A stretch of DNA of 64,000 bases from Chrysemys picta bellii (GCF_011386835.1 NC_088797.1:100688001-100752000), one strand, 5' to 3'; positions 9,488-15,896 are shown, counted from the first letter of the stretch. Program-made: numbers and translations. The notes: a model not told the origin generated them from the letters alone.

Positions 9488-9707
9488 AGCTAAGATGCTT
9501 TCTGTCTAACCACAGCAGTAGCTAAGAATTTAGAAGACATTTCAGTGGCATTGAAAGCAACCTGCAGGGAGAATTTCACAATCAACTGATCCTCAGAGAT
9601 GAGGGACTGAAATTAGTCCTTTTGGTCTTGTGCTAGTCATTACATTAAATGTATGAATTTAGAAAAGACGGTTACTCACCGTTGTAACTGTTGTTCTTCG
9701 AGATGTG

Positions 9708-9872
9708 TTGCTCATATCCATTCCATTAGGTGTGTGCGCGCCGCGTGCACGATCGTCGGAAGATTTTTACCCTAGCAACACCGGCGGGTCGGCTGTGGAG
9801 CCCCCTAGAGTGGCGCCTTCATGGCGCTGAATATATACCCCAGCCGACCCGGCGCCCCCTCAGTTCCTTCTT
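9708..9872. repeat. DIRS right inverted terminal repeat (core shared with the left ITR)
   Basis: 165 nt, exact reverse complement of 15717-15881 on manual alignment. Confidence 0.93.
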
Positions 9873-9909
9873 GCCGGCTACTCCGACAGTGGGGACGGAG
9901 GGCGGGTTT

Positions 9910-10009
9910 GGAATGGATATGAGCAACACATCTCGAAGAACAACAGTTACAACGGTGAGTAACCGTCTTTTCTTCTTCGAGTGCTTGCTCATATCCATTC
10001 CATTAGGTG
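9910..10009. repeat. DIRS internal complementary region (ICR)
   Basis: 9910-9973 is the exact reverse complement of the terminus 9661-9724 (64 nt); 9970-10009 is the exact reverse complement of the other terminus 15857-15896 (40 nt); the two halves overlap by TTCT (9970-9973). Confidence 0.95.
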
Positions 10010-10024
10010 ACTCCCAAGCCCAAC

Positions 10025-12913: not shown

Positions 12914-13389
12914 GCACGGTGGAAGTGGGAGAGGCGATCCCGAAAGGAGGGGGCTGGATCCTGGGGGATGACTGGGGCGCCGTCCTCGACCGCACCTTCA
13001 AAAGTTCTGCCTGGGGCCTGAAGGTGGTCTAGGTGGCCCCTGGTTCTGGCCAGGTTGAGGGCCGGTCCACCTTCTTCTACCACCTCGCCCTCGCCTTCGG
13101 GCCGAGTCCTGTCTCTGACGGGGCGGGGGGGGGTAGAAGCGCTGAGGCTGCGGCCTAAACGGCCTGCGCTGGGGGCCCACAACATGCATCCCCAGGGAGC
13201 GCATGATTGTTCTCGAGTCCTTGAGGCTCTGCAGGCGGGAGTCCGTCTTATCCGAGAACAATCCATGACCCTCAAAAGGCAGATCTTGTAGGGTTTGCTG
13301 CAGCTCCGGAGGCAAACCCGAAACCTGAAGCCAGGAGATCCTGCGCATAGCGATACCCGAAGCCAGGGTCCTCGCCGCTGAGTCTGCAA
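11026..13389 (-). CDS. DIRS ORF2: reverse transcriptase, RNase H and Dam-like methyltransferase (MT) domain
   Basis: RT motifs GFYSRYFLIPK, LRPILDLR, LDMKDAYFHI, LPFGLSSAPRVFTK, YLDDWL; RNase H motifs TDASSLGWG, HINVRELMAV, TDNTTA, NTLADRLSR; MT motifs IDLFAS and YAFPPF. The track start at 13389 is a TTG codon; the first ATG is at 13266. Confidence 0.95.
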   Translation of the reverse strand: MQTQRRGPWLRVSLCAGSPGFRFRVCLRSCSKPYKICLLRVMDCSRIRRTPACRASRTREQSCAPWGCMLWAPSAGRLGRSLSASTPPRPVRDRTRPEGEGEVVEEGGPALNLARTRGHLDHLQAPGRTFEGAVEDGAPVIPQDPAPSFRDRLSHFHRAWSLITSDRWVLRTVERGYAIQFSSFPPSSPPSPSLFRDPSHEQLLIQEVSTLLTMGAIEEVPVDLRGRGFYSRYFLIPKSKGGLRPILDLRGLNKFVVKLKFRMVSLGAIIPSLDPGDWFAALDMKDAYFHIAIYPPHRRFLRFVVNRVHYQFAVLPFGLSSAPRVFTKCMAVVAAYLRRQGIQVFPYLDDWLVRGRTKEQVRDHVHIIVRTFNKLGILLNKDKSTLEPTQRIEFIGAVLDSRRAQAILPDNRFCTITSLIQGLKAFPTTTVRSCLTLLGHMASCTYVTRHARLRLRPLQTWVSSIYRPHRDSLNMVVTIPNSVLTSLTWWLDHNVVCEGMPFHAPQPSLHLVTDASSLGWGAHLNEHHTQGLWTAPQLALHINVRELMAVRLACQAFLNLLRGRCVLVLTDNTTAMFYINKQGGARSSILCQEAIHLWDFCIAHSIHLTASFLPGVQNTLADRLSRSFQTHEWSIRPDIIHSVFQKWGFPQIDLFASRDNRKCHVFCSLQGRAPGSLSDAFLLPWKDHLFYAFPPFPLVHKVLLKLRRDQAQVILVAPAWPRQHWYTTLLELSVQTPIPLPLYPDLITQNHGRLRHPDLQSLHLTAWLLHGSPRQSNSVPTLSNRFC

Positions 13390-15508
13390 TGTCCAAGGAG
13401 GCCTGCAAGGAGGTCCGAGCCACCTTCTTGCCCTCCTCTACCATGGCTCCAAACTCTTCCCTGGACTCTTGGGGAATCAACTCCTTAAACTTCCCCATAG
13501 AGTTCCAGGAGTTGAAATTGTAGCGGCTCAGTAGCGCCTGTTGGTTCGCCGCTCTAAGTTGTAGCCCTCCGGCTGAGTAAACCTTACGGCCAAACAGATC
13601 GAGCCGCTTAGCCTCTTTTGATTTAGGCGCTGCAGCCTGCTGGCCGTGGCGCTCTCGTGCATTCACTGATTCCACCACCAGTGAACACGGTTGGGGGTGG
13701 GTATACAAGTACCCATAGTCCTTAGAGGGGACAAAGTATTTTCTTTCCACCCCTCTCGCTGTGGGTGGAATGGAGGCAGGAGTTTGCCATATCGTATCCG
13801 CATTCGATTGTATCGTGCGGATCAGAGGTAACGCCACCCTCGATGGGGCATCTGCTCCAAGGATGTTCACGATCGGGTCGTGCACCTCCACTATCTCCTC
13901 CGCCTGCAGGTCCATATTACGGGCCATCCTACGCAGGAGATCCTGGTGAGCCCGAAGATCTATCGGAGGGGGACCCGTACATGAAGTGCCCGCCACTGCC
14001 TCGTCCGGAGAGGAGGAAGAGGATGCCTCCGGTGGTACCGGATCCAAGGGGGGGTCCTGATCCCCTTGCTCTTGGGCCGGGGCATCACCTGCACTTGGGT
14101 CCCTGGTGTCGGGTGGCGTGGACACCGAAGCCTCCATGCCTCCTGGCGGAGGCCGAGAGATGGTGGATTCTGGGGCCCTTCTGACCGAGTGACCCGAGCG
14201 AGAGGTCGATGGTATTGGAGCCCCTTGCTCTTGGTGGTACGCCCACGGGGTCCAAAACGACCAGTGAGATGGTCCATGAGAGTGGTCCTCTGCCATCTCT
14301 TGCCAGTGGCCGAAATTTTGTTCCTCGGCGTGCCCTTGAGGGGGGTATGCCGATCTCGACAGGTCCTCCGAGGAACGAGACACCGATCTTGACGGCCATG
14401 GCGGTGCCGAGAGAGATGAAACCATCCCGGTGGGCTGCGGTGCCGCACGGTGCCGGTCCGGAGATGATCTATCTCTGCGCGGTGCCGGCGATCGGTGCCG
14501 GGATCGCGACCGGTGCCGATGACCTCGTCGGTGCCGGGAGTCGGATCTGGACCTCGACGAGGACCTGGAGTATGCCCGGTGCCGGGAGCGACCCCTCGAC
14601 GTCGAGCGTCGACCGTAGCGGTGCCGAGAGCTACGTCTCGACGTTGATCGGTGCCGACGATCATATCGGTGCCGAGACGAAGAGCGGTGCCGCGAAGAAG
14701 ATCTTGGCCGCGAGTACGACCGGTGCCGAGACGGTATTCGGTGCCGGGACTGCGAGCGGCGTGGGGACCTGCTTCGGGACCTGGATCGGTGCCGAGGTTC
14801 CAGCCCTTGTGATGGTGGGCGCATCAAGGCAGGTTTCCCCCTCGACTGGACCGTGCGAGTCAACGGTGCAGTCGGTGCCGGTGGTTGAGGCGGTGCCGGC
14901 TCCGTGAGAGCTATTAAGTCTCTCGCCGCCGCGAAGGTCTCTGGGGTCGACGGGAGGCACTGTATCACCGCCGGCCTGGGGGGAGACGCTATCTGCACCG
15001 GACTCAACGGCCTCGGCGCTGGAGTCGACGGTGCCGGAGGCACCTGTTTTCGTTGCTCCACCGGTGGACGCGGCTCTACCCCCGGCACTGGGGGAGCTGG
15101 CGTCTTCGGCACTGATGTCCCCGTCTTATGGGCTTTTTTATGCCCTGGGGATAAGGACCGGCGCCGAGGCACTTGCTGTGTCTGCGGTGCCGACGAGGTC
15201 CGGTGCCGGGGAGGCTTGTCTGACGCCACTCGCGTGGTCGTCGCAGCCGGGGCACTGCGCACCGAGGTGCTAGGTGCCGGGGCCTTGCTCGTGGAAGGAG
15301 CGTCCGGGCTAAGAGCCGCCTCCATCAGAAGTTGCCTGAGCCGAAAGTCCCGCTCTTTCTTGGTTCTCGGACGGAAGGCCTTACAGATTTTACACTTGTC
15401 TGTCTGGTGTGACTCTCCCAGGCACTTCAGACAGGATTCGTGCGGGTCGCTCGTGGGCATAGGTTTAGCGCAGGAGGCGCACAGCTTGAAGCCGGGAGCG
15501 TTGGGCAT
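12998..15508 (-). CDS. DIRS ORF1: Gag-like protein, 836 aa
   Basis: ATG start; N-terminal Cys/His finger CX2CX9HX2CX2CX4HX4CX2C; Pro-rich and RS/RHR-rich middle; LAP2alpha-like C-terminal region (WQTPASIPPTARGVERKYFVP…HPQPCSLVVES…KRLDLFGRK…LPFEGHGLFS). Confidence 0.92.
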   Translation of the reverse strand: MPNAPGFKLCASCAKPMPTSDPHESCLKCLGESHQTDKCKICKAFRPRTKKERDFRLRQLLMEAALSPDAPSTSKAPAPSTSVRSAPAATTTRVASDKPPRHRTSSAPQTQQVPRRRSLSPGHKKAHKTGTSVPKTPAPPVPGVEPRPPVEQRKQVPPAPSTPAPRPLSPVQIASPPRPAVIQCLPSTPETFAAARDLIALTEPAPPQPPAPTAPLTRTVQSRGKPALMRPPSQGLEPRHRSRSRSRSPRRSQSRHRIPSRHRSYSRPRSSSRHRSSSRHRYDRRHRSTSRRSSRHRYGRRSTSRGRSRHRAYSRSSSRSRSDSRHRRGHRHRSRSRHRSPAPRRDRSSPDRHRAAPQPTGMVSSLSAPPWPSRSVSRSSEDLSRSAYPPQGHAEEQNFGHWQEMAEDHSHGPSHWSFWTPWAYHQEQGAPIPSTSRSGHSVRRAPESTISRPPPGGMEASVSTPPDTRDPSAGDAPAQEQGDQDPPLDPVPPEASSSSSPDEAVAGTSCTGPPPIDLRAHQDLLRRMARNMDLQAEEIVEVHDPIVNILGADAPSRVALPLIRTIQSNADTIWQTPASIPPTARGVERKYFVPSKDYGYLYTHPQPCSLVVESVNARERHGQQAAAPKSKEAKRLDLFGRKVYSAGGLQLRAANQQALLSRYNFNSWNSMGKFKELIPQESREEFGAMVEEGKKVARTSLQASLDIADSAARTLASGIAMRRISWLQVSGLPPELQQTLQDLPFEGHGLFSDKTDSRLQSLKDSRTIMRSLGMHVVGPQRRPFRPQPQRFYPPPPRQRQDSARRRGRGGRRRWTGPQPGQNQGPPRPPSGPRQNF

Positions 15509-15716
15509 GAGCCCGGCCCCGCGGCCGGGGGAGAAAGGGGGGAGACGACCCCCTTAATCCCCTGGACTATTTAGAACAACTTTAAAACTACTTAACTAAT
15601 TTACAACAAACTCTAAGACTATAACTATAACTACAACTATGATACAACAAGATAAGCTAGGGAAGTGGAGAACAGCTAAGCAGCGCTCCACAGTTCCAAC
15701 GACCGTCAGGGGCGGT

Positions 15717-15896
15717 AAGAAGGAACTGAGGGGGCGCCGGGTCGGCTGGGGTATATATTCAGCGCCATGAAGGCGCCACTCTAGGGGGCTCCACAGCCGA
15801 CCCGCCGGTGTTGCTAGGGTAAAAATCTTCCGACGATCGTGCACGCGGCGCGCACACACCTAATGGAATGGATATGAGCAAGCACTCGAAGAAGAA
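15717..15896. repeat. DIRS left inverted terminal repeat (probable promoter region)
   Basis: Reverse complement of 9708-9872 plus the 5' terminal sequence; contains a TATA-like GAATATATAC on the minus strand. Promoter function is inference. Confidence 0.9.

What the first reader, a model, noticed from the sequence alone, without database searches (positions are those of the whole stretch)
9661..15896. Complete, potentially active DIRS1-like retrotransposon in an INPP5A intron
Seen: all three ORFs are stop-free. The RT YLDD motif, the four RNase H acidic residues (D-E-D-D) and the YR R/HxxR/Y residues are present. The 165-nt ITR cores are identical, both ICR halves match the termini exactly, and CpGs are abundant, whereas the three neighbouring DIRS copies are decayed. 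Known: DIRS elements replicate through a circular intermediate integrated by the tyrosine recombinase, and no active DIRS is known in mammals, where gag-derived exons persist (LAP2alpha in TMPO, ZNF451). Inference: a very recent, possibly polymorphic and mobilisation-competent amniote DIRS, usable as a source of an RT-plus-YR integration system.
Basis: partly seen in the sequence, partly recalled or inferred. Interest (0 to 1): 0.78.

Follow-up and report, generated by a model that had tools for sequence, protein, structure and literature searches.

The report
Intact young DIRS retrotransposon in a turtle
This is a complete, undamaged copy of a DIRS-type jumping gene from a multi-copy family that has been copying itself recently in pond turtles; such elements are already known in reptiles, so the copy is ordinary, though it shows clearly how its three proteins may all be read from one messenger RNA.

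Summary
Window 9661-15896 (minus strand) is a full-length DIRS1-like retrotransposon. It has a 165-nt perfect ITR core and ICR halves that match both termini exactly. The gag, RT/RNase H/MT and tyrosine-recombinase frames are all open, all catalytic motifs are present, and CpG o/e is 0.83 against 0.22-0.28 in the flanks.

It is not unique. Eight full-length siblings (91.0-97.1% identical) lie in the Chrysemys picta bellii assembly. Two of them are equally intact, and all have the same high CpG. dN/dS between copies is 0.05-0.16, so the family has been evolving as a functioning element.

No near-identical sibling of this copy was found among the eight. Its age resolves only to "at most a few million years". 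Activity, polymorphism and the INPP5A host gene remain untested.

A C9 homopolymer in the gag tail changes reading phase in 6 of 8 siblings. It is the place where a hidden frameshift would sit.

A lead on expression: gag and the recombinase share one frame, separated only by the gag UGA, which follows UUU. RT is in the +1 frame. The recombinase frame is stop-free across the whole RT overlap in four families (0 stops against 12-19 expected).

The scan flagged another apparently intact DIRS elsewhere in this genome (s1-328333). Verdict: a new member of a known kind, of modest interest.

The parts
9661..15896 (-). Full-length DIRS1-like retrotransposon (6236 nt)
   Evidence: Aligns end to end with eight siblings at 91.0-97.1% identity. 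Boundaries come from the nine-copy flank comparison.
15713..15896 (-). Left ITR. The terminal 40 nt (15857-15896) are complementary to the ICR. A TATA-like motif lies near 15750-15760.
   Evidence: The promoter role is inferred only.
9661..9876 (-). Right ITR (core 9708-9876) plus the right extension (9661-9707). The terminal 63-65 nt are complementary to the ICR.
9909..10009 (-). Internal complementary region. 9970-10009 pairs with the left terminus and 9909-9973 with the right terminus. The halves overlap at the circle junction.
   Evidence: There are 0 mismatches.
12998..15508 (-). gag ORF, 836 aa, ATG start. It has an N-terminal Cys/His cluster (15383-15481), an Arg/Ser-rich repeat region (about 14490-14785) and a LAP2alpha-like C-terminal part (13250-13753).
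   Evidence: Pfam LAP2alpha E 0.0085, below cut-off. It is 98.5% identical to the C. picta protein P0159, with the same C-terminal tail.
13125..13133 (-). C9 homopolymer in the gag tail (G9 on the + strand). Its length sets the phase of the last 45 gag codons.
   Evidence: Relative to this copy the siblings differ by -1, -1, +2, 0, +4, +1, -6 and +1 nt.
12998..13003 (-). UUU-UGA at the end of gag. It is the proposed +1 frameshift site into RT and the only stop between gag and the YR frame.
   Evidence: AAC TTT TGA AGG is invariant in nine copies. A second family has GGC TTT TGA and a third has CTT TGA C. Function is inferred.
11026..13389 (-). RT/RNase H/MT open frame, +1 relative to gag. RT is at 12199-12684 (YLDD 12340-12351), RNase H at about 11512-11871 and the Dam-like MT at about 11203-11496.
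   Evidence: Pfam RVT_1 1.3e-21, RT_RNaseH 4e-4, Dam 2.5e-3. Ty3 RT 4ol8 E 2.6e-15. dN/dS 0.10-0.16.
10025..12997 (-). YR frame, 990 codons, in the same frame as gag. The stretch 11024-12997 is a stop-free but unconstrained linker that overlaps RT. The stretch 10025-11023 is the recombinase (core-binding domain 10832-11023, catalytic domain 10097-10402).
   Evidence: 0 stops against 17.0 +/- 3.3 expected. Linker dN/dS is 1.1-2.9 and domain dN/dS is 0.05-0.11. Pfam Phage_integrase 9.5e-4. Cre profile match 5.8e-7.
15970..17633 (-). gag remnant (aa 1-643 equivalent) of an old DIRS of another family, into which the young element inserted
   Evidence: tblastn 34% identity. CpG o/e 0.18.
7623..8456 (-). 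Continuation of the same old DIRS. A weak gag tail lies at 8280-8456 and RT aa 132-328 at 7623-8185.
   Evidence: It is colinear with the upstream remnant, with about 940 nt of extra sequence in between.
18775..23475 (-). Second old, decayed, near full-length DIRS copy
   Evidence: Fragmented tblastn hits to gag, RT and YR at 34-62% identity. CpG o/e 0.27.
58642..59978 (-). Third old DIRS fragment (RT end and YR)
   Evidence: CpG o/e 0.23.

Best explanation
Shown: the stretch is an intact, evolutionarily young copy of a multi-copy DIRS1-like tyrosine-recombinase retrotransposon family of emydid turtles. Its siblings lie in Chrysemys picta bellii. It is inserted in the same orientation inside an old, decayed DIRS of another family. 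It carries everything the DIRS1 replication model needs: gag, RT/RNase H/MT, a Cre-like recombinase with a complete catalytic set, inverted terminal repeats, and an internal complementary region that templates both termini. The family has been replicating under purifying selection.

Inferred: this copy itself may be competent.

Proposed expression scheme, also inferred: one mRNA is translated from the gag AUG. At the UUU-UGA that ends gag, most ribosomes terminate. Some slip +1 and make gag-RT/RH/MT. Some read through the UGA and translate a 657-codon unconstrained linker, in the frame overlapping RT, to reach the recombinase.
For: - Anatomy and motifs.
- Youth: CpG o/e 0.83 against 0.22-0.28. 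There are 0 differences in 268 paired ITR/ICR positions.
- Private substitutions: only 41, of which 27 are synonymous, 11 non-synonymous and 6 of CpG-decay type.
- Family: eight full-length siblings at 91.0-97.1% identity. dN/dS is 0.05-0.16 in gag, RT and the YR domain. L005 and L006 differ by 0.83%.
- Frame layout is ancestral: the same gag tail is found in P0159, P0163, P0124 and P0158, and the same phase in L004 and L007.
- Recoding scheme: gag and YR share one frame with a single stop between them.
- The YR frame has 0 stops over 634-777 RT-overlapping codons in four families, against 12-19 expected (0 of 2000 shuffles each), while the third frame has the expected number.
- The linker has dN/dS above 1.
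- TTT TGA is invariant in nine copies and recurs as TTT TGA or CTT TGA in two other families with the same frame layout.
- Nested insertion.
Against: - No sibling closer than 97.1% was found. Only eight copies could be sampled, all through gene models of one assembly.
- There is no transcript, circle-junction or polymorphism evidence.
- The C9 run is phase-variable among copies, so a 1-nt assembly error here would break the gag tail.
- There are 11 private non-synonymous changes of unknown effect. The two in the recombinase domain miss the invariant recombinase columns.
- For the recoding scheme, the RNA downstream of the stop folds no better than shuffles (z = 0.18). UGA-A is not a classically leaky context.
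- A more distant family (L011) has different frame relations.
- Internal initiation or a subgenomic or spliced mRNA for the recombinase is not excluded.
Confidence: 0.8

Rival explanations
1. The copy is structurally perfect but dead or silenced. Open frames reflect its youth, not its competence. A missense change, the C-run phase or host silencing (methylation, piRNA) prevents mobilisation.
For: - There are 11 private non-synonymous changes.
- Six of eight siblings carry an off-phase C-run, which shows how easily this site fails.
- No near-identical offspring were sampled.
- DIRS repeats are among the common methylated repeats in painted-turtle gonads (PMC5438563).
Against: - 71% of private coding changes are synonymous, so few changes post-date the last selected replication.
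- The catalytic and invariant recombinase residues are intact.
Confidence: 0.4
2. The intactness is an assembly artefact. Reads from several near-identical copies were collapsed into a consensus that hides copy-specific lesions.
For: The family is multi-copy, and homopolymer length varies between assembled copies.
Against: - The nearest sampled sibling differs at 2.8% of sites, enough for long reads to separate copies.
- The copy has 41 private substitutions and a private 9-nt in-frame deletion.
- The flanks are unique, and the insertion sits cleanly in an old DIRS.
Confidence: 0.05
3. It is a host-domesticated DIRS-derived gene, like LAP2alpha, and not a transposon.
For: The gag C-terminus is LAP2alpha-like. 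Sibling ORFs carry host-gene names in RefSeq.
Against: - The termini, ICR and all enzymatic ORFs are complete.
- Nine or more dispersed copies lie on different chromosomes.
- The host-gene names are annotation spill-over.
Confidence: 0.02

Closest known systems
DIRS1-like elements of vertebrates (Repbase DIRS-n_CPB of Chrysemys picta bellii, DIRS-1_Acar of Anolis, Xenopus DIRS families)
   Same: - Gene order gag, RT/RH/MT, YR.
- ITRs, ICR with a circle junction, and a right extension.
- No target-site duplication.
- Long pol/YR overlap, with the catalytic YR part in the non-overlapping 3' end (PMC3266345).
- Potentially active copies with all ORFs and repeats are reported in Xenopus (PMC9210276), and 775 conserved copies in Anolis (PMC3266345).
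   Different: I could not compare this copy with the Repbase consensus sequences, which are not held here, so which named family it belongs to is unknown. No paper in the library reports activity, intact masters or the expression mechanism for turtle DIRS.
Dictyostelium discoideum DIRS-1
   Same: It has the same cis architecture. The ICR is experimentally essential there. Insertion into pre-existing DIRS copies is reported there (PMC7192593) and seen here and for sibling L001.
   Different: The protein sequences are distant. Nothing is known experimentally for the turtle element.
LAP2alpha domain of mammalian TMPO and ZNF451
   Same: [quoted passage not shown] Painted-turtle copies were used to show this (PMC4495291). 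The gag C-terminus here gives a weak LAP2alpha match, and related turtle gag proteins carry the Pfam hit.
   Different: Those are single-copy host exons without RT, YR or repeats. This is a whole transposon.
Programmed +1 frameshifting at a shifty stop (E. coli prfB CUU-UGA-C, antizyme UCC-UGA) and stop-codon readthrough in retroviral gag-pol
   Same: A slippery P-site codon sits directly before UGA. The gag-to-pol ratio would be set by recoding.
   Different: Here one stop would serve both a +1 shift (to pol) and readthrough (to the recombinase). No stimulatory RNA structure was detected, and nothing has been tested experimentally.

Membership tests
DIRS1-like retrotransposons (order DIRS) | Ty3/Gypsy-related RT and RNase H | tested here: met
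   RVT_1 1.3e-21. Ty3 RT 4ol8 E 2.6e-15, with YLDD aligned, and the Ty3 Gag-Pol match extends through RNase H.
DIRS1-like retrotransposons (order DIRS) | Methyltransferase-like (MT) domain after RNase H | tested here: inconclusive
   The Dam match is weak (E 0.0025, 17.9 bits, below the cut-off of 28.1) and falls at the expected place. The stretch is under purifying selection.
DIRS1-like retrotransposons (order DIRS) | Tyrosine recombinase with the catalytic R-K-H-R-(H/W)-Y set, in place of a DDE integrase | tested here: met
   The profile of 23 DIRS recombinases matches Cre/Tre at E 5.8e-7 to 5e-6. R138/R139, K171, H268, R271, W294 and Y304 are invariant and present. For the single sequence, Pfam Phage_integrase is only 9.5e-4.
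DIRS1-like retrotransposons (order DIRS) | Inverted terminal repeats | tested here: met
   169 nt at 99% identity, with a 165-nt perfect core.
DIRS1-like retrotransposons (order DIRS) | Internal complementary region whose two halves complement the left terminus and the right terminus/extension and overlap at a short circle junction | tested here: met
   The halves are 40 nt and 65 nt, both perfect, and adjacent at 9909-10009. The overlap is 2 nt (TT) across nine copies and 4 nt (TTCT) in this copy, where the extra CT may be flank. The literature describes a 3-bp junction (PMC3266345).
DIRS1-like retrotransposons (order DIRS) | No target-site duplication | tested here: met
   The flanks of nine copies show no duplication beyond the junction bases.
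DIRS1-like retrotransposons (order DIRS) | pol/YR ORF overlap, with the catalytic domain in the non-overlapping 3' end | tested here: met
   The overlap is 1972 nt (11026-12997) and stop-free. The YR domain lies downstream of the RT stop.
Currently active (mobile) transposon | Near-identical sibling copies, insertion polymorphism, transcripts or replication intermediates | tested here: not met
   The closest of eight sampled siblings is 97.1% identical. The exact gag and RT products are not in the protein collection. Sampling is small and biased towards gene-annotated copies. Polymorphism, RNA and cDNA cannot be tested with these tools.

The most novel reading that the evidence does not exclude
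Vertebrate DIRS1-like elements may express all three proteins from one mRNA through a three-way decision at the single stop codon that ends gag. The ribosome terminates (gag), slips +1 on UUU-UGA (gag-RT/RH/MT), or reads through (gag-linker-recombinase). The long stop-free but otherwise unconstrained pol/YR overlap would exist only to carry ribosomes to the recombinase. This intact turtle copy would be a natural substrate for testing the idea, and possibly a live master element.
Probability: 0.3. Interest if true: 0.6.

Novelty: new member of a known kind. Interest (0 to 1): 0.38.

Why it matters
DIRS elements are the least understood order of retrotransposons. The only retrotransposition assay is in Dictyostelium, and no DIRS recombinase has been characterised biochemically.

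A turtle family with several fully open copies under strong purifying selection gives vertebrate material for three questions: how gag, pol and the recombinase are produced in the right ratios, how the ICR rebuilds the termini, and whether integration prefers existing DIRS sequence.

For genome annotation, the family's ORFs are currently named in RefSeq as SRRM2-like, DYRK1A isoform X1, LYRM4 isoform X1 and so on. That is misleading.

As a find in itself, an intact DIRS copy in a turtle is expected, not surprising.

Tried and rejected
- Host gene. Six-frame scans of the window for inositol 5-phosphatase signature motifs, and for several short motifs recalled for the type I enzyme, found nothing. 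The recalled motifs are unreliable, and a 64-kb window may hold few or no exons. INPP5A is therefore neither confirmed nor refuted.
- Stimulatory RNA structure after the gag stop. The predicted long stem is no more stable than shuffles (z = 0.18). It has one covarying pair among five sequences. No support.
- Gag-RT fusion as the ancestral state. The first three siblings suggested it. It was rejected because those copies had been picked up through long fused ORFs. The gag tail of this copy recurs in four further proteins down to 87% identity, and in the most divergent intact sibling.
- Rfam scan of the window: no family matched.
- The bacterial-type promoter and terminator scan is not meaningful for a eukaryotic element.
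- Exact look-up of this copy's gag and RT products: not in the collection.
- Look-up of the Gopherus gag locus: not on record.
- CpG richness and perfect ITR/ICR as markers that single out this copy: rejected, because broken siblings share them.
Copies were only compared.
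Full report
**Anatomy**

The element lies on the minus strand of window 9661-15896. Three long open frames cover it:
- gag, 15508..12998, 836 aa from an ATG.
- An RT/RNase H/MT frame, 13389..11026, in the +1 frame relative to gag and overlapping it by 392 nt.
- A third frame, in the same phase as gag, that is open from the base after the gag stop (12997) to 10025.

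The repeats fit the DIRS1 plan:
- The termini are inverted repeats of 169 nt at 99% identity, with a 165-nt perfect core.
- Just inside the right repeat, 9909-10009 is an internal complementary region.
- Its two halves are perfect complements of the left terminus (40 nt) and of the right terminus with its extension (63-65 nt).

CpG o/e is 0.83 in the element against 0.22-0.28 in the surrounding DNA.

**Proteins**

- RT. The RT frame matches Pfam RVT_1 (1.3e-21) and weakly RT_RNaseH. It aligns to Ty3 reverse transcriptase (4ol8, E 2.6e-15) with motif A and YLDD in register. The Ty3 Gag-Pol match runs on through RNase H.
- RNase H. The four acidic-residue motifs are present at 11853..11512.
- MT. 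The stretch after RNase H gives a weak Dam-methyltransferase match where the DIRS MT domain is expected.
- Recombinase, single sequence. The last 332 codons of the third frame give weak matches to Phage_integrase and its SAM-like N-domain and to Cre.
- Recombinase, profile. A profile of 23 DIRS recombinases from turtles, lizards, amphibians and coelacanth matches Cre/Tre at 5.8e-7 to 5e-6. It aligns HxxR and W to Cre H289/R292/W315.
- Recombinase, catalytic set. R138/R139, K171, H268, R271, W294 and Y304 are invariant in the family and present here.
- gag. It has an N-terminal Cys/His cluster, an Arg/Ser-rich repeat region and a C-terminal part with a sub-threshold LAP2alpha match. This agrees with the published origin of LAP2alpha from DIRS gag (PMC4495291).

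**Neighbours**

tblastn with the three products finds only old DIRS debris elsewhere in the window, all on the minus strand, at 34-62% identity and CpG o/e 0.18-0.27.

The pieces at 15970-17633 (gag aa 1-643 equivalent) and 7623-8456 (gag tail and RT) are colinear across the young element. So the young element sits inside an old DIRS of another family, together with about 940 nt of other sequence.

DIRS-derived sequence makes up roughly 14% of this window outside the element, so chance cannot be excluded. Even so, sibling L001 is inserted exactly in the right-terminus sequence of another DIRS. Insertion into existing copies is also described for Dictyostelium DIRS-1 (PMC7192593).

**The family**

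The RT product's best database match is a Chrysemys picta bellii protein at 95% identity. Through that cluster and the gag clusters I fetched eight full-length siblings from assembly GCA_011386835.2. They lie on five chromosomes and are 91.0-97.1% identical to this copy. The window therefore comes from C. picta or a close relative. The species cannot be fixed with these tools.

When the siblings are read in this copy's frames:
- L004 and L007 are as intact as this copy.
- L005 and L008 differ only in the phase of a homopolymer.
- L001, L002, L003 and L006 carry stops or frameshifts.

All nine copies have CpG o/e of 0.80-0.84. Four of them have the same perfect 165-166-nt ITR core and perfect ICR halves. 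These two features mark the family as young but do not single out this copy.

**Selection and age**

Between this copy and each sibling, dN/dS is 0.07-0.14 in gag, 0.10-0.16 in RT/RH/MT and 0.05-0.11 in the recombinase domain, with dS of 0.08-0.48. Nearly all divergence therefore arose in replicating, selected lineages and not by decay after insertion.

This copy has 41 private substitutions (0.66%). In unambiguous coding sequence, 27 are synonymous and 11 are not, and only 6 are of CpG-decay type. The two private changes in the recombinase domain fall outside the invariant recombinase columns.

If every non-synonymous private change were post-insertion decay, the total decay would be about 0.3%. 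Zero differences in 268 paired ITR/ICR positions gives a similar bound. At an assumed neutral rate near 1e-9 per site per year, these bounds mean at most a few million years. That rate is my assumption from general knowledge, and turtles are slow. The data cannot say "very recent" more sharply than this.

The closest sampled sibling is 2.8% away. Another pair (L005/L006) differs by 0.83%, which shows recent transposition in the family. The sample is small and biased, because only copies that RefSeq annotated as genes could be reached.

**The weak spot**

A C9 run at 13125-13133 lies 41 codons (125 nt) before the gag stop. Relative to this copy, the siblings differ there by -1, -1, +2, 0, +4, +1, -6 and +1 nt. 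The three resulting phases are:
- the gag tail seen here;
- a gag-RT fusion;
- a truncated gag.

The tail seen here (...PRQNF) recurs in P0159, P0163, P0124 and P0158 (down to 87% identity) and in L004 and L007, so it is the ancestral layout. A read-level frameshift hidden by the assembly would most likely sit in this run.

**How the proteins may be made (inferred)**

gag ends AAC TTT TGA AGG, and this is invariant in all nine copies. A +1 slip of the P-site tRNA-Phe from UUU to the overlapping UUU gives GAA as the next codon and continues as the conserved RT N-terminus (...F-E-G-A-V-E-D-G).

The same layout recurs in other families:
- A second C. picta family (L009, 67% nucleotide identity) ends gag with GGC TTT TGA and has RT in +1.
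- A metagenomic family (L010, 48% RT identity) has CTT TGA C, the prfB-type site, again with RT in +1.
- gag proteins of three turtle families all end in Phe.

The recombinase frame is the gag frame, and the gag UGA is the only stop between them. Over the RT overlap it has 0 stops, against 17.0 +/- 3.3 expected from synonymous-codon shuffles of the RT frame (0 of 2000 shuffles). The third frame has the expected 25.

The same holds in L009, L010 and L011: 0 stops against 12-19 expected, 0 of 2000 shuffles each. Read as protein, this stretch is unconstrained, with dN/dS of 1.1-2.9.

The simplest reading is that ribosomes must travel through it. Readthrough of the gag UGA would yield gag-linker-recombinase, while +1 shifting yields gag-pol.

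Points against this scheme:
- No stable RNA structure follows the stop (z = 0.18).
- UGA-A is not a classic leaky context.
- L011 has other frame relations: RT in -1 and YR in +1.
- Internal initiation or a separate mRNA is not excluded.

The long pol/YR overlap itself is a known DIRS1 trait (PMC3266345). I found no paper in the library that links it to recoding at the gag stop.

**Comparison with what is known**

- DIRS1-like elements with conserved RT, MT and YR are abundant in Anolis: 775 copies in 42 families (PMC3266345).
- Turtles hold hundreds to thousands of DIRS gag copies (PMC4495291).
- DIRS is among the most abundant repeat classes in the painted-turtle genome, methylome and transcriptome (PMC5438563).
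- Repbase holds named C. picta DIRS families (DIRS-5_CPB, cited in PMC9210276).
- Potentially active copies with all ORFs and repeats are described in Xenopus (PMC9210276).
In Dictyostelium the cDNA found was mostly linear and single-stranded, and the ICR was shown to be essential (PMC7192593).

**Verdict**

- The copy is complete, intact, young and from a recently replicating family.
- It is not unique.
- Its current activity, its polymorphism and the INPP5A host gene remain untested.

It is a new member of a known kind. The recoding architecture is the most interesting lead.

The scan has flagged another apparently intact DIRS elsewhere in this genome (s1-328333), the nested insertion (s1-329943) and the shifty stop (s1-329990).

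No contig taken for human was met.

Noticed in passing
window 13125-13133; L001-L008 at the aligned site: The C-run in the gag tail differs in length in 6 of 8 siblings and puts gag in all three possible phases in roughly equal numbers (3 of each among the 9 copies). Either it is a slippage hotspot during reverse transcription or replication, or homopolymer errors are present in the assemblies.
   Followed up: partly
window 10025-12997; L009 8347-11304; L010 2250-5168; L011 2983-6531: In four DIRS families the recombinase frame is completely stop-free across the whole RT overlap (0 stops against 12-19 expected). In three of them it is the gag frame, separated from gag by one UGA. The overlapped stretch evolves without protein-level constraint.
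   Followed up: yes
L001-L008 (Chrysemys picta bellii GCA_011386835.2): RefSeq names the ORFs of this transposon family as host proteins. Examples are serine/arginine repetitive matrix protein 2-like, DYRK1A isoform X1, LYR motif-containing protein 4 isoform X1 and, for a softshell relative, RAD51 homolog 2 isoform X1. These are annotation spill-over from transposon ORFs in introns.
   Followed up: partly
window 13390-15508 versus 10028-12912, compared with L001, L002, L007, L008: Synonymous divergence from four siblings is about three times higher in gag (0.30-0.48) than in RT or YR (0.09-0.16). For the other four siblings it is equal. This suggests recombination or template switching between sub-lineages with different gag types.
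   Followed up: no
L001 8208-8232; L006 14992-15875: Sibling L001 is inserted exactly within the right-terminus sequence (...CGAAGAACAACAG|) of another DIRS. L006 abuts a DIRS of another family. Together with the nested insertion in the window, this hints at a preference for DIRS sequence as a target.
   Followed up: partly
window 9025-9320: C-rich direct repeats of about 33-64 nt (CCAAACCCCTCATCCCCAG...) fill part of the roughly 940 nt of extra sequence between the young element and the rest of the old DIRS. Their origin is unknown.
   Followed up: no
window 7623-8456, 15970-17633, 18775-23475, 58642-59978: All DIRS-derived pieces in the window, young and old, lie on the minus strand. With four pieces this is not significant, but another note in this genome reports the same orientation bias in PAXIP1 introns.
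   Followed up: no
L005 and L006 (CM062328.1, 57.6 Mb and 43.1 Mb): Two siblings on one chromosome differ by only 0.83%. This is the most recent duplication or transposition seen in the sample. Both carry an off-phase C-run, and L006 has an extra 1-nt deletion in RT.
   Followed up: partly
window 35236-35369: A run of 134 N (assembly gap or masked).
   Followed up: no
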